Made by a program: the position numbers and the translations under genes
Shown here: one piece after another, positions 50,721-62,325 of the stretch
How the letters are laid out: the number at the start of each line of letters is the position of its first letter
Numbering within the stretch: position 1 is the first letter of the stretch
Virus record (IMG/VR): IMGVR_UViG_3300046787_000286
Coordinates: 1-64,000 of that record
DNA length: 64,000 nucleotides
Direction: 5' to 3' (one strand)
The notes under the pieces: generated by a model
The model's database searches: none
Seen by the model: the letters and a program-made list of their open reading frames with translations, nothing else
What the model was told of the DNA's origin: nothing

Positions 50721-51008
50721 TTACAAATTCAAGTACTTTAGCTGGAACCAGCTTTGTGCTTTGTCGTCAAAGAAATCTAGATGTACTTGGTCTTCGTAGT
50801 GCATGTTGGTACCATTATTAGTCTTGTGTTCGTTTGGTACGAGCCCTTGGTGGTAGCGATATGTAAACCCAAGCTCACGTTTCATTCGCGGTCGCACTGC
50901 CATGCCCATGCCAAAGTCCCGGAGGATGCTTGCATAGATGTCTGACCACTCTCCAGGATTGTGAAAGATGATTAGATGTTTTTTAACAGTGACTTTGCTC
51001 ACGACCAT
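50721..51008 (-). CDS. Small protein, F-x-L-[KR]-W paralogue family
   Basis: Ends 'LDFFDDKAQSWFQLKYLNL'. Confidence 0.7.
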   Translation of the reverse strand: MVVSKVTVKKHLIIFHNPGEWSDIYASILRDFGMGMAVRPRMKRELGFTYRYHQGLVPNEHKTNNGTNMHYEDQVHLDFFDDKAQSWFQLKYLNL

Positions 51009-51370
51009 CCACCGCCTAGCCGTTTCCAGGCCAGCCGTTGTTCCATTATTAATTTGAACTTACGTGCTTCATCTTCTTTGATAAATTTGCAGCCAATAAC
51101 CACATGATGATCTGATACGTATCGCGCGGCGCCTTCTTGATCTTGGAACCATGCAGCTTCGTTGAGATACATAGTTTCAAATTGGTCCGGCTTGTTGTAT
51201 TCATGCACGCCGAGTATGGCCTCAACAACACCAATGTCATCAAACAAGATTGCCAACAAGTTTTTGGCTTTGTTTGCATTGTTTACAACAACCATTTCAA
51301 ATCCAGGCCAGCTCACTGACCAGTGATTATCAGGCAAGTCTTTTAAAACAAAACGTTCTGTTACTTCCAT
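50999..51370 (-). CDS. Small protein, same family (divergent)
   Basis: Ends 'KFIKEDEARKFKLIMEQRLAWKR'. Confidence 0.65.
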   Translation of the reverse strand: MEVTERFVLKDLPDNHWSVSWPGFEMVVVNNANKAKNLLAILFDDIGVVEAILGVHEYNKPDQFETMYLNEAAWFQDQEGAARYVSDHHVVIGCKFIKEDEARKFKLIMEQRLAWKRLGGGWS

Positions 51371-51669
51371 TTTAACATCAACATGGTGTAAAGTTTTTCG
51401 TGCATGTCAAACACATTGAAGTGCATGTACCACTGCTTATCTATATGCTCGTGTCTGTGCCACATGTCGGGATCTTGTTCTTGCACCCAGCCACTAACTA
51501 GGCTAGGCTTACATTGTACTGTATACCAGGTTTCTCCGTCAACTTGGGCTTGATCCAAAATGCGAATTGCTGGCGGGTTCGCTATGTCCATGTATGTGCT
51601 TTTGCCCGTTTGTTGAGCAGCCATTAGTGTAGTAATTTGGCCTTTACGCCATCCTGTTGCTGTGGTCAT
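51361..51669 (-). CDS. Small protein, same family
   Basis: Ends 'FDMHEKLYTMLMLKWK'. Confidence 0.65.
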   Translation of the reverse strand: MTTATGWRKGQITTLMAAQQTGKSTYMDIANPPAIRILDQAQVDGETWYTVQCKPSLVSGWVQEQDPDMWHRHEHIDKQWYMHFNVFDMHEKLYTMLMLKWK

Positions 51670-51871
51670 CTAATAAGATTTCAAAAAGTGTTGCGTATTG
51701 TGTTTCGGGTTCCATGTGAAACCCTGAACCCCAAACTATCCATACCTTACGCTTATATGCCTGCTGCCAGCCAATACGTTGTCCTGTAATTGTCTTGCGT
51801 GGCCACATAACAAATGTCTTGGTCCAAGGATAACAATCTGCTCCATCGGTAATAATTTGTTTTATTTCCAT
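51644..51871 (-). CDS. Small hypothetical protein
   Basis: MEIKQIITDGADCYPW..FVMWPRKTITGQRIGW; start ATG 51871. Confidence 0.6.
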   Translation of the reverse strand: MEIKQIITDGADCYPWTKTFVMWPRKTITGQRIGWQQAYKRKVWIVWGSGFHMEPETQYATLFEILLDDHSNRMA

Positions 51872-52122
51872 CGTAACAAAAACCAATCACGGTCTGCTTC
51901 ATTTCTAAACCAAAACTTAGCATTGTTTACATACCAACGACAGCTAGGTGTAAACACACCATCTTTAGGAGTGGGACCAAATGTTTCTACACACCACGCA
52001 ACCATGTTATTCCAAGTGTCAATCCCGCCCCAGTCACCGGCTGGATCCCAGTTGGGCACTGGCTTCACAGTCCAGTACCTTGCACCAAATACTCGACCTT
52101 CGTTGATCTCAAATTGTCTCAT
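51862..52122 (-). CDS. Small protein, same family
   Basis: 'MVAWCVETFG', ends 'FWFRNEADRDWFLLRWK'. Confidence 0.75.
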   Translation of the reverse strand: MRQFEINEGRVFGARYWTVKPVPNWDPAGDWGGIDTWNNMVAWCVETFGPTPKDGVFTPSCRWYVNNAKFWFRNEADRDWFLLRWK

Positions 52123-52337
52123 GAAAACTTCAGCGCAAATATTGTAGCATCCTCGTCGTCTTCAAACTCAACAAATTTGCCAGCCCAATCGGGTGCCATA
52201 TAGGACGGCGCCTGGCAATTCTGTTTGCACCAGTAATGAATTTCGCCCCAGTTATATTTGGGGTTGTAAGTTGCTCTGTGCAATTTTGGCACTTTAAAAG
52301 TTGGATGTTCTTTCCAAGGGTAAGTGTATGTAATCAT
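52119..52337 (-). CDS. Small protein, same family
   Basis: Start ATG 52337; 'IHYWCKQNC', ends 'VEFEDDEDATIFALKFS'. Confidence 0.75.
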   Translation of the reverse strand: MITYTYPWKEHPTFKVPKLHRATYNPKYNWGEIHYWCKQNCQAPSYMAPDWAGKFVEFEDDEDATIFALKFS

Positions 52338-52573
52338 GCTGTTCCAAATTTTAATGCAAACATTATAGCAGGCTGTTCCCACTCGAACTGATATGTGACA
52401 TATCCATTGTCAAACTCTCTAGTGTCTAAGTACCAACGCTGAAAGTAGCCTGTACCAGTTACTGGGTACGCTTCACACCATTCATATGCGCCTTCACAAG
52501 CATCACGGCGCAGCCGCACCTTGTAGCGAAAGTCTGGGTTTGATCGGCCGCCGCCACCGTAGAACTTTTCCAT
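52334..52573 (-). CDS. Small protein, same family
   Basis: Start ATG 52573; 'AYEWCEAY', ends 'YQFEWEQPAIMFALKFGTA'. Confidence 0.75.
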   Translation of the reverse strand: MEKFYGGGGRSNPDFRYKVRLRRDACEGAYEWCEAYPVTGTGYFQRWYLDTREFDNGYVTYQFEWEQPAIMFALKFGTA

Positions 52574-52782
52574 TAACTCCACCTCAAACAAAATGCAGTC
52601 AGAGTTGACGTATTGGGGAATACCACAGTCATTCCAACAAATGCAGAACCGTTGTCCCAGCACCAGTTTCGCAATTCAGTTTCATGATCTGCCCAGTAAT
52701 GGAAGTCTGACAGTATAACCATTTGTTCGGCGTCAGTTAACACGCAAGGGACGACAATGAATCTCTCTTGAGTTGAAACCAT
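52573..52782 (-). CDS. Small protein, same family
   Basis: 'LRNWCWDN', ends 'VVFPNTSTLTAFCLRWS'. Confidence 0.7.
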   Translation of the reverse strand: MVSTQERFIVVPCVLTDAEQMVILSDFHYWADHETELRNWCWDNGSAFVGMTVVFPNTSTLTAFCLRWS

Positions 52783-53021
52783 GTTGCATCCTTGTGTGCT
52801 TTAAAGTATATGTCGCACCATTTGCGTTTAATAACAGCAGGAGCAGAGTCAAGCCATTCATATCGTGTCCGATGAAACCATGTGCCTTTTCTAGTGCCAC
52901 CTTTGCCAAATAAATTTTGTGCAAGTATTAGAGCATTAAACACATGCTCGTCATAATCTTTACGAGTCCACCATCCGTTGCCTTGTTCTTCTGCTAGTAC
53001 ACTAATTCTTGTAGACTTCAA
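52737..53021 (-). CDS. Small protein, same family
   Basis: Ends 'IYFKAHKDATWFQLKR...'. Confidence 0.65.
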   Translation of the reverse strand: MKSTRISVLAEEQGNGWWTRKDYDEHVFNALILAQNLFGKGGTRKGTWFHRTRYEWLDSAPAVIKRKWCDIYFKAHKDATWFQLKRDSLSSLAC

Positions 53022-53025
53022 TTGA

Positions 53026-53268
53026 TCAACCCCACTTTAATTTAAAGATCATAGCGTCCGAACTTTTTTCAAATGCAAATTTACGCATTGCAAAACTTCC
53101 AACCCAATGTCCACTACACCGGCTATTGCACCAAATAGTGAGTCCCATCCAACTTGTTGCCGCAGTATGTTCGTCTCCAGGCTCTAGCACAGTCCAGCCA
53201 CGTTTGACAGCACCGCGCACACTCCGGGGATTTGACACTTTGTATGGTAAATGATATCCTCTAGACAT
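53026..53268 (-). CDS. Small protein, same family
   Basis: 'LTIWCNSRC', ends 'FAFEKSSDAMIFKLKWG'. Confidence 0.75.
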   Translation of the reverse strand: MSRGYHLPYKVSNPRSVRGAVKRGWTVLEPGDEHTAATSWMGLTIWCNSRCSGHWVGSFAMRKFAFEKSSDAMIFKLKWG

Positions 53269-53605
53269 TTGTTATATCAATTGGGTGAGACAACTGGAAC
53301 CAACCAAGTTCTTTTTCACTGGCCAAGTAGATTCGATAGTCATTGTATTGCACAGAGTAAGCCCAATGCTGGTTGATGTCTTCATCTTGTACCACAGTAT
53401 TAATTGGATCCATTCTGCGTTGTAACAAGTTGGAACGAGTCTCCACGTCTTGTGACCAACCCCAATTAGTAGTCATCCAACGTCTAGAACGATCAAAGTC
53501 TAATACGCCAGTGCCTTTCCAGGTGCTTTTAGAAAACTCTAGCATATAAGCAAATTGAGCACACCAGCTATGTCGACGATCTAATTTAGTTACTTCGTAT
53601 CTCAT
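53261..53605 (-). CDS. Small protein, same family
   Basis: Start ATG 53605; 'RRWMTTNWG', ends 'IYLASEKELGWFQLSHP...'. Confidence 0.7.
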   Translation of the reverse strand: MRYEVTKLDRRHSWCAQFAYMLEFSKSTWKGTGVLDFDRSRRWMTTNWGWSQDVETRSNLLQRRMDPINTVVQDEDINQHWAYSVQYNDYRIYLASEKELGWFQLSHPIDITNV

Positions 53606-53610
53606 AATAA

Positions 53611-53640
53611 AGAAAAAGGCTGTGGGGGACACAGCCTGTG
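53611..53640 (-). terminator. Intrinsic terminator
   Basis: Minus strand AGGCTGTG-TCCCC-CACAGCCT-TTTTCTT after the ATPase stop. Confidence 0.75.
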
Positions 53641-53661
53641 CAACCCCCACTGCCTTCTAGT

Positions 53662-55051: not shown

Positions 55052-55080
55052 AAAAAACCCTACACAGTGTAGGGTTTAAA
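55052..55080 (-). terminator. Intrinsic terminator
   Basis: Minus strand AAACCCTAC-ACTGT-GTAGGGTTT-TTT. Confidence 0.75.
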
Positions 55081-55096: not shown

Positions 55097-56233
55097 TTAC
55101 ACACTAGCAACTTTATACAACGGGCTTAGATGCCCTTTTAATCCTTCGTTGACTGTGTTGTTATTGAACCATTTTTTGCCGCATTGGCGTTCTAGTTCCC
55201 ACAGGCTACCTTCCCACTTGAGTCTCGCTTCTAACTGCCCATCCAAAAACCACTTGGACAGTTCGTTGTAGATAGCACCAGTTGGCTTTTTAATCTGCCA
55301 TGTGTTATGATTCCAGTCTGCATAGATACTGAAGTTTACTTCTTTGTAATAACTTTCGTCGTGGAAGCTAGCAACATTACTCATGTGTTTGATTAGATTG
55401 AGTTTGTTGTTGGCACGAAGCCAGTTTACAACCACATGACTTTGCTTGATTGCTAGTTCGGGCATGTTCGGAGACCAATAAAAGTACTCGTCGTTCTCCC
55501 AGTACTCGCCAAGTATGTCATTAGTTGGCAAGGTGCCAGTGGTCATAATAACATCTAAAAATGCAAAGTAGATGTTATTGTCATCACGAAGCAGTCTTGG
55601 CTTATCTACCCCGTAAACAAACCCAACACGTTTTCCGCGATGCACTAACTCGTTGTGCTCTCGGAATACTTTGTGAAACTTGCTACGAACCATGCAAGTA
55701 GGATCGAATCTAACTCCGGCTGACCAAATCCAATCAGGGTCGTTAGCAGCTTCTACTATGTGCTTGGTCCAATCAAACACGTTAACTTTGATTTTTTTAT
55801 CCGCTACAAGTTTTTTAAGAGCGGGCAGGGCCTGTTGAATTTCTCTAGTGTAGTAACCGGGGTCACGACCAAATCCCAATCGAGAGTATTCTTTCTCTTC
55901 GGCTTCGAATGCACCGAACATGTAGATCTCATCTATGCGGATATTATTTTTAATAAACGCATTGAGGATATTCCAACTATCAACTCCGCCTGAATAGAAC
56001 AACACTAAATGGTCATATGCTTCGCGAAGTTGTAATGCTCGCTGTTTGTATAGCTCTTCTAGCTCTACAGTTGGTTCGAGATCCCACTTGTGCGCTCCGA
56101 AGATAGCGTCGTGATAGTCCCACTCAATCCACGAACCTGGATTAGCGTTGACTTCTAATATGGCTTCTAGTTTGTTTAAAAAAGGTTTACCGTTTGCACA
56201 GTAAATCCCTTTATTATGATACAGATATGTCAT
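55097..56233 (-). CDS. PP-loop (N-type ATP pyrophosphatase / adenine nucleotide alpha hydrolase-like) protein
   Basis: 'LVLFYSGGVDSWNIL' SGGxDS motif; 'GVDKPRL'; substrate unknown. Confidence 0.7.
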   Translation of the reverse strand: MTYLYHNKGIYCANGKPFLNKLEAILEVNANPGSWIEWDYHDAIFGAHKWDLEPTVELEELYKQRALQLREAYDHLVLFYSGGVDSWNILNAFIKNNIRIDEIYMFGAFEAEEKEYSRLGFGRDPGYYTREIQQALPALKKLVADKKIKVNVFDWTKHIVEAANDPDWIWSAGVRFDPTCMVRSKFHKVFREHNELVHRGKRVGFVYGVDKPRLLRDDNNIYFAFLDVIMTTGTLPTNDILGEYWENDEYFYWSPNMPELAIKQSHVVVNWLRANNKLNLIKHMSNVASFHDESYYKEVNFSIYADWNHNTWQIKKPTGAIYNELSKWFLDGQLEARLKWEGSLWELERQCGKKWFNNNTVNEGLKGHLSPLYKVASV

Positions 56234-57123
56234 TGGCGAGCGTTATTAATTTGTTGCTTAAATTGTTCTTGTTTGATTCTAACAGTGTTCATAGATGTTG
56301 CATAAAACTCTTCTACAGTAACATTATCAAACACTGGAGGTCTAACAGCAGATAGCTTGTAGATTTCTTCTGGTCCTACGAATTTTGTGGCATTGTTCAA
56401 GATAATACCAATAGCTTTCCTGCGAGTTTCGTTCATGCTTTTAGAAGCAACGATAATATTAAAAACATATGGTGCGTCCATACCAAGTTCTTTAAGAGTT
56501 TTTACTTTGGGCTCTTGCGGCAAACGAGTTTGACAACTTGCTGCTACCATTTTTAAATTTGAATTTTTTGTCTTTAGAGCTGCATAGGATTCGTAACGAT
56601 CGATAACAAACTCAACACCATTATTGCCGGCCATGTTGATTAACGCATCATTATTAGATTTGAACACAATATAACGAGTTTTAAACTTATACTTTTCTGC
56701 AAGCATTAGACCGGTTAGATGTGAAGCATTGCCGTATCCTACTCCCCCGAGTGTAAACTCAGTTTGATTTTTAAAATCCTTGTTAGTCACAACAGCCCAA
56801 CATGCATTTCCTAATGCATACACTGGCACGTAGTTTTCTTCTTTAAGTTTGCCAGTAGCAATATTATCAACATACGCCGGTGCTATAATAGCTAGACTAT
56901 TTTCTGTAGTTAGTGATGTTACTGCAATTGTTTGATTACCACCTGGTTTAAACTCTAGTATAAAGGTATAGGCGGTTTGAGATGAATTTGCTGCATCAAT
57001 GATTTTATACAAGGCAGGCGTTGCACTATGGCTTGGTGAATACGGCGAATAAATTTTGATAACTTCGCTAGCGTTAACAACTGCCGAGCCAAGAAGTAAT
57101 AATGTAAAAAAAAGTTTTTTCAA
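56230..57123 (-). CDS. TctC/Bug-like periplasmic solute-binding protein
   Basis: TTG start with AGGAG RBS; signal peptide; 'IYSPYSPSH', 'EFKPGGNQTIA', 'GGVGYGNASHL', 'IVFKSNNDALINMAG', 'PKVKTLKELG'. Confidence 0.75.
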   Translation of the reverse strand: MKKLFFTLLLLGSAVVNASEVIKIYSPYSPSHSATPALYKIIDAANSSQTAYTFILEFKPGGNQTIAVTSLTTENSLAIIAPAYVDNIATGKLKEENYVPVYALGNACWAVVTNKDFKNQTEFTLGGVGYGNASHLTGLMLAEKYKFKTRYIVFKSNNDALINMAGNNGVEFVIDRYESYAALKTKNSNLKMVAASCQTRLPQEPKVKTLKELGMDAPYVFNIIVASKSMNETRRKAIGIILNNATKFVGPEEIYKLSAVRPPVFDNVTVEEFYATSMNTVRIKQEQFKQQINNARQ

Positions 57124-57274
57124 TTTTAAATCTCCTAAATAAGAATAACTTAAGAGCTAGTAGAAGACCTCTACTCACGGACGGCGTTATAGGCATATTA
57201 TGCTAGTAAAAGAGTAAAGTACTCTAGGCGTCGATTTGATTCCGACGTCGGAAAGAACTCCGGCGTTGCAATAT
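57124..57274 (-). ncRNA. Candidate structured 5' leader (cis-regulatory RNA)
   Basis: ~150 nt between a TAAATA and the RBS, containing palindrome TTCCGACGTCGGAA, hairpins AGAGTA/TACTCT, GCATA/TATGC and AGTAGA/TCTACT, and three ACGCC repeats. Confidence 0.45.
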
Positions 57275-57658: not shown

Positions 57659-58174
57659 TCAACTGTTTAGAACACGAGCAACACTAGTGATTACACTAGC
57701 AATCCGCCCGATATCGCGCAACTGCTCAACTGTGTAACCTTCTTGTTTTAAAGTCTCGTAGTGAGCCTTTACACAAAAATGGCACTTGCCTACAATACTC
57801 GCTGCCAAGCTGTATGCTTCGAATCGAGCTTTAGTTGTGCCGCCATGTGAACTAATAGCGTTCATGCGTAACTGGGCCGGCAAACCTTTTAAGTTCTCGT
57901 CATCGGCCATTTCGACATAGGGGTACCAGATGTTGTTTTGTGCCATGATCGAGCCGGCTGTTAGTGCAGCATCACGCTCTTTTGTGTCAACAATGCTGCT
58001 ACTAATAAAAGTAATCAGTTTGCCGTTACCTGTTGCAAAGGCCGCAGCCAGTGCAATTGCTTCTGCTTCCTCTGGTGCCAAGGTACTGCGTTTGATCACA
58101 GCGTCAAGATTTAACTTGGTGTCCTTAGCATACTCAGGAAGACCTTCTTTAAGTTGGTCTACCCATGCAGTCAT
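57659..58174 (-). CDS. ahpD: Alkyl hydroperoxidase AhpD
   Basis: 'YAKDTKLNL', 'MAQNNIWY', 'KCHFCVKAH' CxxC; TAATG-coupled to ahpC. Confidence 0.9.
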   Translation of the reverse strand: MTAWVDQLKEGLPEYAKDTKLNLDAVIKRSTLAPEEAEAIALAAAFATGNGKLITFISSSIVDTKERDAALTAGSIMAQNNIWYPYVEMADDENLKGLPAQLRMNAISSHGGTTKARFEAYSLAASIVGKCHFCVKAHYETLKQEGYTVEQLRDIGRIASVITSVARVLNS

Positions 58175-58713
58175 TACAGAGTCTCCCCGCCTACTGTACG
58201 GTTACAAGCGCAAAGTTCGCCAGTCTGCAATGCGTCAAGAATACGCAGAGTTTCTTCTGGGCTACGGCCAACGTCCAAGTTGTTGACAGTAACGTGTTGG
58301 ATAACGTTGTCCGGGTCAACGATGAATGTTGCGCGAAGTGCCGCACCTGCTGGCGCATAGAACACACCTAGTTGTTCGACCAAGCTCAACTCACCACGCT
58401 GTGTATCAGCAAACTGAGTGTGAGTAATTTTCTTCAAATCACTGTGTGCCATTTGCCATGCTGTCTTACAGAACTCGTTGTCTGTTGAACCTGTTAGCAA
58501 TACTGCATCGCGATCAGCAAAGTCACCAGTCAACTTATCGTAGGCCACAATTTCAGTTGGGCAAACGAATGTGAAGTCTTTTGGATAGAACACGATTACT
58601 TTCCATTTGCCTTCGAAGCTTTGGTCTGTAATTGTGAAGTATGCGTCTTCTGGTTGGCCTGGCTTAACTCCTGTGACTGCGAACGCTGTTAGTTTATCAC
58701 CGATTGTTTTCAT
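58174..58713 (-). CDS. ahpC: Peroxiredoxin AhpC
   Basis: 'FYPKDFTFVCPTE' peroxidatic Cys, 'RATFIVDP', 'GELCACNR'. Confidence 0.95.
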   Translation of the reverse strand: MKTIGDKLTAFAVTGVKPGQPEDAYFTITDQSFEGKWKVIVFYPKDFTFVCPTEIVAYDKLTGDFADRDAVLLTGSTDNEFCKTAWQMAHSDLKKITHTQFADTQRGELSLVEQLGVFYAPAGAALRATFIVDPDNVIQHVTVNNLDVGRSPEETLRILDALQTGELCACNRTVGGETL

Positions 58714-59068: not shown

Positions 59069-59152
59069 TGGTGCCCAGGGCGAGACTCGAACTCGCACGG
59101 ATTTCTCCACTACCACCTCAAGATAGCGTGGCTACCATTACACCACCTGGGC
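59069..59152 (-). tRNA. tRNA-Leu(GAG)
   Basis: GCCCAGG/CCTGGGC acceptor, CTATC-TTGAGGT-GGTAG anticodon arm, long variable arm, TTCGAGT, CCA. Confidence 0.93.
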
Positions 59153-59527
59153 TTATCTTATTGCTTTTGCTCTAGCGTGAATAACATCATCAACATTGCC
59201 TTTAACAATGACATTGGTGTAGGTGTCTACAAATTCGCTAGCATGATCTACCACACGATTGTCAGGTTCGTGGTAGGTCCTAACTCGCTCGCTACCTGCT
59301 AGGTTGCGTTCCTTGTCTTTGTGGAAGTGTGCCTGAATGCGTGACAAGCAGGTAATGTAGGCTGCACGTTTGTTATCTTCGCGGCTACGGCTGTTAGTGC
59401 CGTTCGCTTGAATGCCAGTGGGCTCATGAATGCATCGGCAACAATTTTGATGCTTGTTACGATGTTGCCCACCTTTGCCTGTTCCAGAGAACCACTCGTA
59501 ACGAAATTGATCTTCTGTAATTTTCAT
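59153..59527 (-). CDS. Truncated class-I peptide release factor (GGQ domain; ArfB/PrfH-like)
   Basis: 'WFSGTGKGGQHRNK...IHEPTGI...SRSREDNK..A' plus RF-like 'ERVRTYHEPDNRVVDH'; start ATG 59527 with AGGAG RBS. Confidence 0.85.
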   Translation of the reverse strand: MKITEDQFRYEWFSGTGKGGQHRNKHQNCCRCIHEPTGIQANGTNSRSREDNKRAAYITCLSRIQAHFHKDKERNLAGSERVRTYHEPDNRVVDHASEFVDTYTNVIVKGNVDDVIHARAKAIR

Positions 59528-59541
59528 TGCAGTCTCCTGAT

Positions 59542-59616
59542 TGGTGCGCGATGAGAGATTCGAACTCCCGACATCTGTCGAGTCAGAACAGCGCTCTACC
59601 ACTGAGCTAATCGCGC
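59542..59616 (-). tRNA. tRNA-Val(GAC), atypical U37
   Basis: GCGCGAT/ATCGCGC acceptor, canonical D and T arms, CTGTT-CTGACTC-GACAG anticodon arm, A73, CCA. Confidence 0.85.
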
Positions 59617-59794
59617 AAAAAAAGCAGTAGGGTTACTGCAAACAGAATGAACTGAGTGGCTTGCCCTACTGCGGATGTTGTGTGCATACTACTTGTCTCA
59701 TTATACTCCGCATGCAAGGGAGAGGCTTCTAACAGTAGGCGTTTAGAGTTCGGCGTTAGCGGAAACATCTAACCGTTTTGTCCTACTGTGTTAT

Positions 59795-59877
59795 TGGTGC
59801 GGACGGTGAGACTCGAACTCACACGCACTAGGCACTGGCTTCTAAGACCAGCGTGGCTACCATTACACCACGTCCGC
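59795..59877 (-). tRNA. tRNA-Leu(TAG)
   Basis: GCGGACG/CGTCCGC acceptor, CTGGT-CTTAGAA-GCCAG, long variable arm, CCA. Confidence 0.93.
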
Positions 59878-59883
59878 AATTTT

Positions 59884-60111
59884 TTATCTAACTTTTTTAA
59901 GATACTCTGGACCGACTTTGCCGGCTTGCACTTCAAGTAATGCAGTAACTGAAGCATTCAACTGACCAGGATTTTCTGATCGTTTATGCCTGACAATAAG
60001 TTCACGCACTCTAGCAGATGCTGCGATTACTAAATCGAATCTGTTGCCAATTTGTTCAACACAAGCGTCTGTATCAATTTGAGTTCCGCGACTTTCAGTG
60101 AGAATTTTCAT
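59884..60111 (-). CDS. rpoZ: RNA polymerase omega subunit homologue
   Basis: 'CVEQIGNRFDLVIAASARVREL...TALLEVQAGKV' matches the omega pattern (NRF.LV..A..RAR.L...AL.EI..GK). Confidence 0.8.
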   Translation of the reverse strand: MKILTESRGTQIDTDACVEQIGNRFDLVIAASARVRELIVRHKRSENPGQLNASVTALLEVQAGKVGPEYLKKVR

Positions 60112-60131
60112 AAAATATCTAAGTTAGTTGT

Positions 60132-60205
60132 TGGATGCGGGAGACAGATTCGAACTGCCGATGCACCTGGCTTATGAGACCGGTGTGGTGGCCACCCTTC
60201 CCGCG
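60132..60205 (-). tRNA. tRNA-Met(CAT), initiator-like but atypical
   Basis: C1:A72 mismatch, CTCATAA loop, GGCAG-TTCGAAT-CTGTC T arm, CCA; reduced D arm and U73. Confidence 0.75.
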
Positions 60206-60212
60206 TAATTAC

Positions 60213-60779
60213 TTATACCAATTGTTCTGCTTGGAGCAAAGCAACTGTGTCGGCATCCAATTCGATTTCGGTGCGAACGTTGAGTTCTAACACTTTGTCA
60301 TTGATGCTTTGCTTTTCTTTCTTGAGGCTTCGCATGTCGGCTTTGTAGGCTTCGATTTGAAGGTTGTCTAACACGCCAGTGTCGACGTTGTCGTTGTAAC
60401 CGTAAACACGGTTCTTGTTGTCTGTGTTGCGAAGTTTTTCTAACTTGCCGTTGAGAACAACGTAAGACTCAGCAGCCTTGCTCTCTGTCAGGCCTTTCAG
60501 GTGTCCTAGACGCTTGTCAACAAACGCAGCTTCAGCAAGCAAATCGCTTACGCCACTTTCTACGTTAGCACGACCAACACGGGCACGGATGCCATACAAC
60601 ACCTTGGTCAACTTTGCACGACGAAGGTCGCTTTCAACTAATGCACCACGTGCAACAGCGATCTCACCTTCAACGGTCTGGAACTCGTTTAGGGAGATCG
60701 ATGTTTTTACATCAATGGTTTTGATGTGATCCTGAATTGTGTTTTGCAGGGCGTTTGCTTTGCGAAGTGTAATCTTCAT
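60213..60779 (-). CDS. Coiled-coil hypothetical protein
   Basis: 188 aa 'MKITLRKANALQ...'; AAGGAA RBS. Confidence 0.8.
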   Translation of the reverse strand: MKITLRKANALQNTIQDHIKTIDVKTSISLNEFQTVEGEIAVARGALVESDLRRAKLTKVLYGIRARVGRANVESGVSDLLAEAAFVDKRLGHLKGLTESKAAESYVVLNGKLEKLRNTDNKNRVYGYNDNVDTGVLDNLQIEAYKADMRSLKKEKQSINDKVLELNVRTEIELDADTVALLQAEQLV

Positions 60780-60789
60780 ATTCGAGTTC

Positions 60790-61084
60790 CTTTCTATTTG
60801 AATTAGTAGCAGTGAGCGTATGGCAAGTCAATCGCCGGACAATGTGCAAGAGACATTAGCGAATGATAATTTTTCAGGTTATCACTTTACTAAAGCAAAA
60901 TACAAGAGACAGAGGATACCAATATTTCCGAGCATCAACAAACAGCGACTATAACAGCCAGTATAATCTCGGATCACTGGATCACGATTGGTAATTCCAG
61001 TAAGCATTTCAAGTGCTAACTAGAGGTGCAATCTCTCATCTCCATACACATCACAGTCCTGTTTTAAGAAACAGGCAAAAACTT
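60790..61084 (-). ncRNA. Candidate structured leader/ncRNA
   Basis: ~295 nt with no ORF in the track; hairpins CCTGTTT/AAACAGG, ACTGGA/TCCAGT, TCCGAG/CTCGGA and TGATAA/TTATCA; TGTCTCTTG occurs twice. Confidence 0.4.
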
Positions 61085-61162
61085 TGGAGTCCCGGGTAGG
61101 ATTCAAACCTACGAATCGATGGATTTGCAATCCACGCCATTAAGTCGCTCTGGTACCGAGAC
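61085..61162 (-). tRNA. tRNA-Cys(GCA)
   Basis: GTCTCGG/CCGGGAC acceptor, GTGGA-TTGCAAA-TCCAT, U73, CCA; T loop TTTGAAT. Confidence 0.9.
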
Positions 61163-61167
61163 ATATT

Positions 61168-61250
61168 CTTTATATGTAAACACACTAAAACGCGACCTTA
61201 GTTTCCCAGTTACGGTATTGTCAGTTGGTATAATGTGTTTGCATATAAAG
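61168..61250 (-). ncRNA. 83-nt element closed by a 17-bp stem
   Basis: CTTTATATGCAAACACA ... TGTGTTTACATATAAAG (one G-U pair). Confidence 0.45.
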
Positions 61251-62158
61251 TGGCGGACTGAGAATACATCCTAACCTAGTAACACCTCGGACATTATTAC
61301 AAACCTTGCGAGTCTGCTTTCTTCCGACTTCCACTAAAACCATATTGCTATGTATTCTAGTCTGTTACCAGTATCGCCGTTTTTAAAGACAGGCAGTAGT
61401 CTTGTCGTCACATGCTACTCTACACCATCTATCCCGTTGACCTTTAGAGCCATTCACTGTCGCTAAACAGCTACGAAACTTCCAGTATAAACAGATTTCA
61501 CCTTGCGAGTTACGTCTGACTGTATTGCCTTGCGGCTACAGCATTAGATACTTTTCACACATGACCGAGTCAGTCTTTGCATTTTAATCGTTAGCGGGAG
61601 TTGAACCCGCAGTCGACTCCTTAACAGGGAGTTGGCCTACCATTAGCCTATAACAACCTACTGCGATGTGCTGACTCAGTTGCTTCATACTCTTTTGGAA
61701 TACAAAATACAACACACCACGTTCCTTTTGTCTTGCGAACTACTCAGACGTCTTTTGCGATATGTGTCGGGTCTCGGCTTTCGCGTACCTCCACTTACCA
61801 CTCAAACTGCATACGAGCCCTAGGGTGCAACCCCTCGGACAAATACACTACCCTTTCTCATACCAATTAACTGGACTGGTTTCGTTGTGAAGTCAGCACC
61901 ACCTGTTACTTTCCATCTACTCAAGTTCCCCTTGATGCAATCTCAGGCTTGTAAGCAAACGTTCTTTCCACAACATCCAGCGTCATTGTTACAACCACCG
62001 GTCTTATCAGTGATCGCTCCCTTGCAGGAGTGAGCAGGCTTGCCTAAGTGAACTATTTTTAGTAGCGGAGTTATGTAGGCATACCTCCTTTGGCTGTGTC
62101 ACCACAGTTATTCTTCACTAGATAGCAAGCTACCTAGTAGGACATTAAGCTGCCCTTA
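61251..62158 (-). ncRNA. Large ornate ncRNA, GOLLD-like
   Basis: ~900 nt ORF-free, behind a perfect sigma70 promoter, next to tRNAs; many GNRA (GCAA/GAAA)-capped hairpins; embedded tRNA in a helix tip; boundaries approximate. Confidence 0.7.
61586..61657 (-). tRNA. tRNA-Asn(GTT) embedded in the large ncRNA, no encoded CCA
   Basis: GTTGTTA/TAACGAT acceptor, GGCT-AATGGTA-GGCC D arm, ACTCC-CTGTTAA-GGAGT, GCGGG-TTCAACT-CCCGC. Confidence 0.8.
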
Positions 62159-62164
62159 TATTCT

Positions 62165-62193
62165 ATTATAACATTGATTGCTGCACTTGTCAA
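62165..62193 (-). promoter_or_regulatory. Consensus sigma70 promoter TTGACA-17-TATAAT
   Basis: Perfect consensus; points into the large ncRNA/tRNA array. Confidence 0.88.
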
Positions 62194-62210
62194 CCATCAA
62201 CATTACCAAA

Positions 62211-62325
62211 TCTGTAAACAACTGCACACTTACAGGACTCGAACCTGACGACCAGGGCAATAGCCCTAGCTATGAATCCAACCATATCAGCGTGGCCTAC
62301 GCCTTTATGTGCATGTGTTTAAAGA
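62211..62325 (-). ncRNA. 115-nt tRNA-like small RNA without CCA
   Basis: Ends pair (TCTTTAAACA..TGCACA / TGTGCA..TGTTTACAGA); internal hairpins GCGT/ACGC and CTAGGGC/GCCCTGG; T arm CAGG-TTCGAGT-CCTG; has its own promoter. Confidence 0.55.

What the first reader, a model, noticed from the sequence alone, without database searches (positions are those of the whole stretch)
55097..57123. Coupled gene pair: secreted Bug/TctC-type binding protein plus cytoplasmic PP-loop adenylating enzyme, with no transporter
Seen: ATGA overlap at 56230-56233; signal peptide and TctC-like motifs in one gene, SGGVDS PP-loop in the other; no TctA/TctB genes nearby; a terminator closes the pair. Established: PP-loop enzymes adenylate substrates (QueC, TilS, AsnB, NAD synthetase), and Bug/TctC proteins are expanded in Betaproteobacteria. 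Inference: an uncharacterised phage module that scavenges or senses a small carboxylate and activates it, possibly feeding the tRNA or glycan modification chemistry; the TctC gene also hints at a betaproteobacterial host.
Basis: partly seen in the sequence, partly recalled or inferred. Interest (0 to 1): 0.65.

Follow-up and report, generated by a model that had tools for sequence, protein, structure and literature searches.

The report
Phage orphan binding protein plus PP-loop enzyme
A huge uncultured phage carries a secreted TctC/Bug-type solute receptor whose gene overlaps that of a cytoplasmic ATP-using (PP-loop) enzyme from a large unnamed phage family; the two gene kinds sit side by side in many distantly related phages, which suggests an import-and-activate module that borrows the host's membrane transporter.

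Summary
Two minus-strand genes overlap in ATGA. A Shine-Dalgarno site precedes the first and an intrinsic terminator follows the second.

Gene 1 (297 aa) has a signal peptide and is a divergent TctC/Bug receptor. Its model has pLDDT 93, and the top 14 PDB matches are all TTT receptors. The family's carboxylate 'pincer' motif is altered.

Gene 2 (378 aa) has an invariant SGGxDS PP-loop and matches no Pfam, PHROG, NCBIfam or PADLOC model. Its fold is closest to the synthetase domain of asparagine synthetase B and beta-lactam synthetase (Z 9.5 to 7.2). It lacks a glutaminase domain. It belongs to a large, almost wholly viral family of 1,570 clusters at 50% identity.

The pairing is not chance. 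A TctC-type gene lies within 6 kb in 17 of 26 loci that carry the enzyme. This covers at least six enzyme lineages under 30% identical to each other, with the receptor in different positions and orientations.

No TctA or TctB is found in this contig or in two near-complete relatives, so the receptor is an orphan.

Most likely the receptor feeds a host TTT permease and the enzyme adenylates the imported acid. The substrate is unknown. The proposed links to tRNA or glycan chemistry and to a betaproteobacterial host are unsupported.

The parts
57132..57136 (-). Shine-Dalgarno AGGAG, 9 nt before the TTG start of the receptor gene
   Evidence: Read directly from the sequence.
56230..57123 (-). Gene 1: secreted TctC/Bug-type (TTT family) solute-binding protein, 297 aa
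   Evidence: ORF. Pfam TctC 27.1 bits. PDB phmmer finds 4x9t at E 3e-6 and BugD at 4.5e-3. The AlphaFold model has pLDDT 93. The top 14 Foldseek matches are all TTT receptors, TM 0.59-0.75. 612 homologues were found, several named TctC by JGI.
57070..57123 (-). Signal peptide, residues 1-18, with predicted cleavage after VNA
   Evidence: Sequence features. N-termini of the same kind occur in 119 of 120 relatives. The model's first strand starts at residue 20.
57019..57045 (-). Domain-1 'pincer' loop, residues 27-35: P-Y-S-P-S-H-S-A-T in place of the TTT signature P-F-x-A-G-G-x-x-D
   Evidence: Alignment A3. The signature is taken from review PMC5812351.
56719..56748 (-). Domain-2 ligand loop GGVGYGNASH, residues 126-135. 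It aligns with BugD's loop.
   Evidence: HMMER alignment to 2f5x and 4x9t. G126 is nearly invariant in A3.
56230..56233 (-). ATGA overlap of stop and start codons, a translational coupling signal
   Evidence: The same 4-nt overlap is seen in L005, L007-L009, L031 (13324-13327) and L034.
55097..56233 (-). Gene 2: cytoplasmic PP-loop ATP pyrophosphatase-fold enzyme, 378 aa, with an AsnB-like synthetase fold and no glutaminase domain
   Evidence: ORF. No Pfam, PHROG, NCBIfam or PADLOC hit. Model pLDDT 76.6. Foldseek finds LarE, GMP synthetase, NAD synthetase and beta-lactam synthetase. VIA finds AsnB at Z 9.5 over 265 aa, beta-lactam synthetase at 8.1, CarA at 7.2 and TsnB9 at 6.6. The family has 1,570 representatives.
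55976..55993 (-). PP-loop motif SGGVDS, residues 81-86
   Evidence: Read from the sequence. Invariant in A1. G83 and D85 are invariant, and S81, G82 and S86 at least 90% conserved, in A2. The motif lies between strand 75-79 and helix 84-95 of the model.
55055..55077 (-). Intrinsic terminator-like hairpin with a T-run that closes the pair
   Evidence: sequence.

Best explanation
The pair is a conserved two-gene 'import and activate' module of a clade of huge aquatic phages.

Shown:
- Gene 1 encodes a Sec-exported, orphan TTT-family (TctC/Bug) solute receptor.
- Gene 2, translationally coupled to it, encodes a cytoplasmic stand-alone PP-loop enzyme. Its fold is that of the synthetase domain of asparagine synthetase B, beta-lactam synthetase and carbapenam synthetase.
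- The two gene families travel together in many deeply diverged phage lineages.

Inferred mechanism:
- During infection the receptor is secreted to the host periplasm and captures a small anionic metabolite.
- It delivers that metabolite to the host's own TctAB-type permease. Cyanophage PstS uses the host Pst system in the same way, and orphan Bug proteins share a few TctAB permeases.
- In the cytoplasm the PP-loop enzyme adenylates the acid group (acyl-AMP plus PPi) and passes it to a nitrogen nucleophile. With no glutaminase domain or partner, that would be free ammonia or an amine. This traps or converts the metabolite for phage use.

The substrate is unknown. The receptor's altered pincer loop (Gly-Gly changed to Ser/Gly-His, Asp changed to Thr) suggests it is not one of the known Bug ligands.
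For: Identity of the parts:
- Receptor.
- Enzyme.

Linkage:
- In 11 close loci the receptor lies directly upstream of the enzyme in 7.
- Custom HMMs find a TctC-type gene within 6 kb in 17 of 26 enzyme loci. It is by far the commonest neighbour; MoxR is next with 9.
- At least six enzyme lineages under 30% identical to one another each have an adjacent receptor. These receptors are under 25% identical to one another.
- The receptor may be upstream and overlapping, downstream, convergent, or between enzyme paralogues.
- The receptor has been replaced in place. In L011 the enzyme is 72% identical to the window's but the receptor only 21%. L037 and L038 have enzymes 61% identical but receptors 20% identical and on opposite sides.
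- Background frequency is low: 2-3 TctC genes per 320-354 kb genome.

Other neighbours in place of the receptor are also membrane or transport proteins: DUF2061 directly next to the enzyme in 6 loci, and an MFS transporter in L023/L024.

Orphan status: no TctA or TctB in the contig, and no TctA in five relatives, two of them 93-100% complete.

No glutaminase. No fused longer forms occur among the top 150 family representatives, which are 230-461 aa long.

Precedent: orphan TTT receptors next to enzymes that use the imported acid (PMC5812351).
Against: - No substrate, binding or activity has been measured.
- The receptor and the enzyme act in different compartments, so adjacency is the only link.
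- Nine of 26 enzyme loci have no receptor nearby, including close relatives L002/L003, L006 and L012.
- Receptors of the same clade also occur away from any enzyme gene: L013 among radical-SAM genes, L015 next to tail-collar-type genes, and a second copy in G002.
- Many of the loci are related phages, so part of the co-occurrence is shared ancestry.
- The host, and whether it has TctAB, is unknown.
- The AsnB likeness is by fold only. Profile comparison with E. coli AsnB aligns just the 11-residue PP-loop. Z 9.5 is only moderately above the aligner's usual noise of 7-8.
- The enzyme model has a disordered stretch at 226-255.
Confidence: 0.45

Rival explanations
1. Neighbours without a shared pathway. 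The receptor is a stand-alone nutrient-scavenging auxiliary gene, like phage PstS. The PP-loop enzyme works on an endogenous cytoplasmic substrate such as a metabolite, nucleotide or macromolecule. They lie together only because both sit in a variable 'auxiliary' region that the phage clade inherited.
For: - The enzyme is far better conserved than the receptor: 70-91% against 43-76% identity within the clade.
- The enzyme keeps its place upstream of the MoxR ATPase in 11 of 11 close loci whether or not the receptor is there.
- Nine of 26 loci lack the receptor.
- Receptors occur elsewhere without the enzyme.
- The receptor gene has lower GC than its surroundings, 36.4% against 42.1%. This is what a separately acquired gene might show.
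Against: - Adjacency recurs in at least six lineages that share under 30% enzyme identity, with different receptor lineages and orientations. This includes replacement of the receptor at the same spot.
- 4-nt overlaps tie the two reading frames together in several lineages.
- Where the receptor is absent, another membrane or transport gene often takes its place.
Confidence: 0.3
2. Biosynthetic reading. The PP-loop family, often in 2-4 tandem paralogues, belongs to a phage pathway that builds or decorates a small molecule or peptide, together with radical-SAM/SPASM enzymes, a PurD-like ATP-grasp ligase and a GNAT acetyltransferase. The secreted receptor, DUF2061 and the MFS protein would handle export, retention or sensing of the product rather than import of a precursor.
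For: - Tandem paralogues occur in L036 (2), L037 (4), L039 (3) and L040 (3).
- Neighbours include radical-SAM/SPASM, GARS_A ATP-grasp, acetyltransferase, a 2OG-oxygenase-like protein and an FMN oxidoreductase.
- L021 holds receptor, DctP, GNAT, ATP-grasp and a distant family member in one same-strand cluster.
- AsnB-fold enzymes include lactam and macrolactam formers. This is from my own knowledge and was not tested here.
Against: - The window itself has none of these partners. Its neighbours are AhpC/AhpD, a MoxR ATPase and small ORFs.
- No precursor peptide or carrier protein was found.
- TTT receptors are known as uptake or sensing receptors, not as export components.
Confidence: 0.12
3. 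Sulfur-activation reading. The PP-loop enzyme acts like a CysD or PAPS-reductase-type enzyme on sulfate, a sulfonate or a related anion delivered by the receptor, and works with DUF2061 and an APS-kinase-like protein.
For: - DUF2061 lies directly next to the enzyme in 6 loci.
- In the window's own genome DUF2061 overlaps an APS-kinase-like gene at about 141 kb.
- CysD, APS reductase and PAPS reductase appear among the fold matches at Z 5.3-5.9.
- One distant member weakly hits the PAPS-reductase PHROG.
- The receptor's pincer loop has lost the carboxylate signature.
Against: - The AsnB-type matches are clearly better and longer: Z 9.5 over 265 residues, against 5.9 over 156.
- No CysN-like GTPase partner was seen.
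- The APS-kinase/DUF2061 pair lies 85 kb from the enzyme in this genome.
Confidence: 0.05

Closest known systems
Orphan Bug/TctC receptors of the tripartite tricarboxylate transporter (TTT) family: BugD, BugE, Bug27, TphC, AdpC, MatC
   Same: - Sec signal peptide.
- About 300 aa, type II periplasmic-binding-protein fold. All of the best 14 PDB matches are TTT receptors.
- The PG(G/A) motif after strand 2 and the domain-2 loop G-x-G-x-x-S-H are kept.
- It is encoded without TctA or TctB, like most Bug genes, and next to an enzyme gene.
   Different: - It is phage-encoded.
- It is only 14-19% identical to solved members and barely reaches the Pfam threshold.
- The near-ubiquitous domain-1 signature P-F-x-A-G-G-x-x-D reads P-Y-S-P-S-H-S-A-T, and this holds across the clade.
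- The ligand is unknown.
Synthetase (C-terminal) domain of class II amidotransferase-type enzymes: asparagine synthetase B, beta-lactam synthetase, carbapenam synthetase, TsnB9
   Same: - SGGxDS PP-loop at the start of a Rossmann-like domain, followed by a helical C-terminal domain.
- These are the best fold matches and the longest alignments: Z 9.5 to 6.6 over 246-267 residues.
- Atlas and BFVD neighbours carry Asn_synthase labels.
   Different: - No N-terminal glutaminase domain, and no glutaminase anywhere in the contig.
- No Pfam PF00733 match in any of 48 family members.
- Profile comparison with E. coli AsnB aligns only the PP-loop.
- It has its own conserved 55-residue N-terminal segment.
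Other PP-loop ATP pyrophosphatases: LarE, GMP synthetase ATPPase, NAD/NMN synthetase, TilS, QueC, TtuA/NcsA, PAPS reductase/CysD
   Same: PP-loop motif and core fold. Foldseek gives E about 1e-3 with probability 1.0, and VIA gives Z 5.3-6.2.
   Different: Only the roughly 150-residue core aligns. No sequence-level family match was found. No 4-Cys or Fe-S signature was noticed; this was not tested systematically.
Cyanophage PstS, a phage-encoded periplasmic phosphate-binding protein that works with the host Pst transporter (own knowledge, not tested here)
   Same: The concept is the same: a phage supplies only the soluble receptor and relies on the host's membrane components.
   Different: It belongs to a different receptor family and transporter class. 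PstS is not coupled to a cytoplasmic activating enzyme.

Membership tests
TTT solute-binding proteins (TctC/Bug, Pfam PF03401) | Sequence match to the family model at or above the curated threshold | tested here: met
   27.1 bits against a cut-off of 27.0, so marginal. Receptors next to the enzyme in other lineages score 38-121 bits.
TTT solute-binding proteins (TctC/Bug, Pfam PF03401) | Two-lobed type II periplasmic-binding fold that is closest to solved TTT receptors | tested here: met
   Model pLDDT 93.1. Foldseek ranks 1-17 are all TTT receptors, E 1e-14 to 1e-11, TM 0.59-0.75. Other binding-protein families start at E 1e-8.
TTT solute-binding proteins (TctC/Bug, Pfam PF03401) | N-terminal export signal | tested here: met
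   Judged by sequence features only, with no dedicated predictor. The N-terminus has KK, a hydrophobic core and VNA|SE. 119 of 120 relatives look alike.
TTT solute-binding proteins (TctC/Bug, Pfam PF03401) | Domain-1 pincer signature P-F-x-A-G-G-x-x-D that holds the two waters binding the ligand's carboxylate | tested here: not met
   The window has P-Y-S-P-S-H-S-A-T at residues 27-35; its clade has P-Y-S-P-G/S-H-S-A/G-T. Receptors of other phage lineages (L031a, L043, L045, L037, L040) keep P-G-G-x-x-D. The signature is from PMC5812351, which also notes that hydroxyl side chains can stand in for the waters.
TTT solute-binding proteins (TctC/Bug, Pfam PF03401) | Works with TctA/TctB membrane subunits | not testable with these tools
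   None is encoded in the contig or in five related phage genomes. The host is unknown.
Asparagine synthase family (Pfam PF00733; AsnB, beta-lactam synthetase, CarA) | Sequence match to the family model | tested here: not met
   No hit for the protein or for any of 48 family members. hhalign against E. coli AsnB aligns 11 columns, probability 2.6%.
Asparagine synthase family (Pfam PF00733; AsnB, beta-lactam synthetase, CarA) | Synthetase-domain fold, meaning the PP-loop domain plus the helical C-terminal domain | tested here: met
   1ct9 Z 9.5 over 265 aa, 9b6c 8.5, 1jgt 8.1, 1q15 7.2, 7ylz 6.6. The next families score 6.2 or less over about 155 aa. Z is moderate.
Asparagine synthase family (Pfam PF00733; AsnB, beta-lactam synthetase, CarA) | N-terminal Ntn glutaminase domain, active or vestigial | tested here: not met
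   Only 55 residues precede the PP-loop domain. No GATase_7 or GATase hit occurs in the 214-kb contig.
PP-loop ATP pyrophosphatase superfamily | SGGxDS motif in a strand-loop-helix at the start of a Rossmann-like domain | tested here: met
   S81-G-G-V-D-S86 lies between strand 75-79 and helix 84-95. It is conserved across the family. Core fold matches to LarE, GMPS, NadE and TilS.
PP-loop ATP pyrophosphatase superfamily | Substrate-dependent cleavage of ATP to AMP and PPi | not testable with these tools
   Needs an enzyme assay.
QueC (Pfam PF06508) | Sequence match to the family model | tested here: not met
   No hit. Only 13-14% of members of some neighbouring Atlas clusters carry a QueC label.

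The most novel reading that the evidence does not exclude
Huge phages run their own 'hijack the permease' supply lines. They carry several orphan Bug-type receptors, 2-3 per genome. Each redirects the host's TTT permease to a metabolite that a dedicated phage PP-loop enzyme then amidates or otherwise activates.

One concrete version that the data do not exclude is uptake of a pyridine carboxylate. Bug27 and Bug69 bind nicotinate and quinolinate (PMC11452294). An NMN/NAD-synthetase-like amidation would follow, rebuilding NAD+ during infection.

Either way this would be a new, widespread class of phage auxiliary pathway built on an unnamed enzyme family of more than 1,500 sequence clusters.
Probability: 0.15. 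Interest if true: 0.8.

Novelty: new variant of a known kind. Interest (0 to 1): 0.55.

Why it matters
Both folds are known. What appears undescribed:
- A large, almost purely viral PP-loop family with no entry in Pfam, PHROGs, NCBIfam or PADLOC.
- Its recurrent pairing with orphan TTT receptors in huge phages.

I found no paper on phage TctC receptors or on this enzyme family in the searchable library.

If the import-and-activate reading is right:
- It extends the cyanophage PstS idea, where a phage supplies a receptor for a host transporter, to a second transporter class.
- It couples that receptor to a committed cytoplasmic step.
- It gives a direct route to the ligand of an otherwise opaque enzyme family: find what the receptor binds, then test the enzyme on it.

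It would also name a family that is now 'hypothetical protein' in hundreds of aquatic phage genomes.

Tried and rejected
Searches that found nothing:
- Cultured-phage collection: blastn of the region, and tblastn of both proteins and of a distant family member.
- Sequence and profile searches of the enzyme against the PDB gave only noise.
- Family scans of the enzyme found nothing in Pfam, PHROGs, NCBIfam or PADLOC.
- hhalign of the family profile against E. coli AsnB aligned only the PP-loop.
- A riboswitch or structured leader upstream of the pair could have named the ligand. There was no Rfam match, and the leader fold has z -0.4.
- A glutaminase partner in the contig: none.
- TctA and TctB in this and related phage genomes: none.

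- A scan of viral contigs with the diverse alignment A2 failed because no block was conserved enough. Single divergent members were used instead.
- Several look-ups of distant family members returned contigs too short to show context.

Host inference from the receptor was rejected. The one 'genome' hit at 56% identity is a Haliscomenobacter MAG. Other contigs of that MAG carry phage-type genes, namely enzyme-family paralogues, TctC, AhpC and a MoxR ATPase, so contamination of the bin by phage DNA is likely. The next genome hit, a betaproteobacterial MAG, is only 24% identical.

Complex prediction was not used. The two proteins are expected in different compartments and no binding is claimed.

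Only genetic code 11 was used. 
Full report
**Setting.** The window is the first 64 kb of a 214-kb IMG/VR virus contig, estimated 62% complete. Its MoxR-type ATPase is about 50% identical to those of PA5oct-like jumbo Pseudomonas phages. No cultured phage matches the flagged region at DNA or protein level. Both genes lie on the minus strand. Upstream are an AhpC-AhpD pair and a 101-aa ORF. Downstream are a 64-aa ORF with its own promoter-like site, a MoxR ATPase, a run of small ORFs and a DUF2201/VWA protein.

**Observation.**
- The 297-aa ORF (57123..56230) starts at TTG, 9 nt after AGGAG. It ends in the TGA that overlaps the ATG of the 378-aa ORF (56233..55097), giving ATGA at 56230-56233.
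- The first protein has a classical signal peptide.
- The second has SGGVDS at residues 81-86.
- A 10-bp hairpin with a T-run follows 20 nt after its stop codon.
- TctA and TctB are absent from the whole contig.

**Gene 1.**
- Pfam TctC is reached only marginally, 27.1 against 27.0 bits. phmmer against the PDB finds only TTT receptors.
- With an alignment of 29 relatives the model is confident, pLDDT 93.1.
- Its 14 best PDB matches are all TTT receptors: TphC, BugD, BugE, Bug27, MatC, AdpC and 4x9t. E is 1e-14 to 1e-11 and TM 0.59-0.75. Other binding-protein families are about 1,000-fold weaker.
- It is therefore a Bug/TctC-type receptor, but a divergent one. The signature loop that holds the ligand's carboxylate through two waters, P-F-x-A-G-G-x-x-D (PMC5812351), reads P-Y-S-P-S-H-S-A-T here. 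Its whole clade reads P-Y-S-P-G/S-H-S-A/G-T. TctC genes next to the enzyme in other phage lineages keep P-G-G-x-x-D. The second ligand loop (GGVGYGNASH) is conserved.
- The family is large: 612 hits, all with signal-peptide-like N-termini.

**Gene 2.**
- No model in Pfam, PHROGs, NCBIfam or PADLOC matches. Sequence and profile searches of the PDB give nothing.
- The word search found 284 relatives; the 120 best listed are 64-99% identical, metagenomic, and unnamed apart from 'hypothetical protein'.
- Because the family scans left the protein open, I used the one large profile search. It returned 1,570 representatives at E <= 1e-3 and 549 at E <= 1e-30. The top 150 are 230-461 aa long, so none is fused to a glutaminase domain.
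- None of 48 diverse members hits a Pfam family.
- The model (pLDDT 76.6, with a disordered stretch at 226-255) places the PP-loop between strand 75-79 and helix 84-95.
- Foldseek finds PP-loop enzymes only: LarE, GMP synthetase, NAD synthetase, TtuA and beta-lactam synthetase.
- The exhaustive aligner puts AsnB (Z 9.5, 265 residues), human ASNS (8.5), beta-lactam synthetase (8.1), carbapenam synthetase (7.2) and TsnB9 (6.6) ahead of all other PP-loop families, which score 6.2 or less over about 155 residues.
- Atlas and BFVD neighbours are uncharacterised viral proteins. After them come proteins labelled asparagine synthase or QueC.
- Against membership of the AsnB family: no PF00733 match, only the PP-loop aligns with E. 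coli AsnB, and there is no glutaminase domain or gene.
- I therefore file it as a new family of the PP-loop superfamily with an AsnB-like synthetase fold.
- It is acidic (pI 6.3), which does not suggest a nucleic-acid substrate.

**Is the pairing real?**
- In 11 close loci from viral contigs the enzyme is always present, at 72-80% identity, and is always followed by the MoxR ATPase. The receptor lies directly upstream in 7 of them.
- I then fetched loci of divergent family members and scanned all ORFs with HMMs built from both families.
- A TctC-type gene lies within 6 kb of the enzyme in 17 of 26 non-redundant loci. It is the commonest neighbour family by a wide margin.
- The adjacency occurs in at least six enzyme lineages that share under 30% identity. 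Their receptors are under 25% identical to one another.
- Four layouts occur: upstream with a 4-nt overlap, directly downstream, convergent, and between enzyme paralogues.
- Two cases show the receptor exchanged while the enzyme stayed. In L011 the enzyme is 72% identical and the receptor 21%. L037 and L038 have enzymes 61% identical but receptors 20% identical and on opposite sides.
- Complete relatives carry only 2-3 TctC genes per 320-354 kb, so chance adjacency is about 1% per gene. This is my estimate.
- The link is not obligatory. Nine loci lack the receptor, and receptors also occur elsewhere.
- Where the receptor is missing, the gene next to the enzyme is often another membrane or transport protein. 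DUF2061 takes that place in L003, L006 and L012, and also flanks the enzyme in L037, L039 and L040. In L023/L024 an MFS transporter with a methyltransferase does.

**Mechanism.**
- What is shown: an exported orphan TTT receptor; a cytoplasmic PP-loop enzyme of AsnB-like fold; translational coupling; and long-term linkage across phage lineages.
- What is inferred: the receptor loads a host TTT permease with a small anion, and the enzyme adenylates it and transfers it to ammonia or an amine.
- Orphan Bug receptors that share a few TctAB permeases, and orphan receptors encoded next to enzymes that use the imported acid, are documented in bacteria (PMC5812351). Phage PstS is a conceptual precedent (own knowledge).
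- I give this 0.45.
- The main rival, at 0.30, is co-location without a shared pathway.
- A biosynthetic reading gets 0.12. It rests on tandem paralogues and on neighbours such as radical-SAM/SPASM, ATP-grasp, GNAT and oxidoreductase genes.
- A sulfur-activation reading gets 0.05. It rests on DUF2061 lying next to an APS-kinase-like gene in this genome.
- The remainder is left for readings not considered here.

- Nothing connects the pair to tRNA or glycan chemistry.
- The tRNA cluster at 59-62 kb is separated from it by the AhpCD genes, and no riboswitch or structured leader precedes the pair.
- The betaproteobacterial-host hint is not supported. TTT receptors are widespread and the phage receptors are too diverged to point to a donor.
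- The only 'genome' hit at 56% identity lies in a MAG that also holds contigs with phage-type genes.

**Novelty and score.** Both folds are known, so this is not a new kind of system. The enzyme family is unnamed and large, and its pairing with orphan TTT receptors in huge phages is not described in the literature I could search. It is a new variant of a known kind. Interest is 0.55: moderately surprising, and directly testable because the receptor offers a handle on the enzyme's substrate.

**Limits.** The host is unknown and no residue-level active-site comparison was possible. Many loci are related phages, so the counts overstate independence. The lineage argument is the stronger evidence.

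Noticed in passing
window 50721-53650 (minus strand): About ten short back-to-back or overlapping ORFs (69-129 aa) lie between the MoxR ATPase and the DUF2201/VWA gene. Nine of eleven end in a similar C-terminal motif: an aromatic residue, any residue, L, K/R, then W/F, often preceded by D/E-x-A-x-x. BLAST finds no similarity among them at E <= 0.01. They may be a fast-evolving family of small paralogues.
   Followed up: partly
window 57659-58713 (minus strand): A peroxiredoxin AhpC (179 aa) and an AhpD/CMD-family protein (171 aa) overlap by one base. An AhpC gene also directly follows the second receptor-enzyme pair in L031. Peroxide defence genes thus travel in the same region.
   Followed up: partly
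window 59069-62312: A cluster of six tRNA calls (Leu x2, Val, Cys, Asn, and one odd call with a two-base anticodon at 62224-62312). It is interleaved with an RF-1-domain (GGQ) protein at 59153-59602, whose listed GTG start overlaps tRNA-Val, and with an RNA polymerase omega/Rpb6-like ORF at 59884-60111.
   Followed up: no
G000:C1:139543-142698 (L051), outside the window: An APS-kinase-like P-loop gene (143 aa) overlaps a DUF2061 membrane-protein gene (82 aa). In sister phages DUF2061 sits directly next to the PP-loop enzyme instead.
   Followed up: partly
G000:C1:82435-82527 (L048), outside the window: A second, unrelated PP-loop-like match lies in a 290-aa open frame. Only Asn_synthase model positions 23-53 match, at 15 bits.
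   Followed up: no
L013:8858-11334 and L037:3850-5190: Radical-SAM enzymes whose SPASM Fe-S domain lies N-terminal to the radical-SAM core, the reverse of the usual order. There are several per locus, and they sit next to TctC-type receptors or PP-loop paralogues.
   Followed up: no
L019-L021 (NCBI metagenome assemblies): A receptor 68% identical to the window's sits in a same-strand cluster. The cluster also holds a DctP (TRAP) receptor, GNAT, fatty-acid desaturase, PurD-like ATP-grasp, Rieske oxygenase, AMP-binding enzyme, SDR, BKACE, radical-SAM genes and a 421-aa distant member of the PP-loop family.
   Followed up: partly
L015-L018: A receptor 64% identical to the window's lies inside a run of large same-strand genes that begins with a phage tail-collar-domain protein. 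It has no PP-loop gene nearby. The MoxR and DUF2201 genes lie 6-8 kb away on the other strand.
   Followed up: no
G001 (MAG titled Haliscomenobacter sp.), contigs C90, C57, C31 and ctg3: The MAG holds four PP-loop family genes, three TctC-type genes, and AhpC, MoxR and a DNA ligase in phage-like gene runs. Huge-phage contigs have probably been binned with the bacterium, or the phage was inside those cells.
   Followed up: partly
window 56230-57123: The receptor gene has 36.4% GC. The window and the enzyme gene have 42.1%, and the MoxR and AhpC genes have 47%. This fits the receptor's faster turnover or later acquisition.
   Followed up: no
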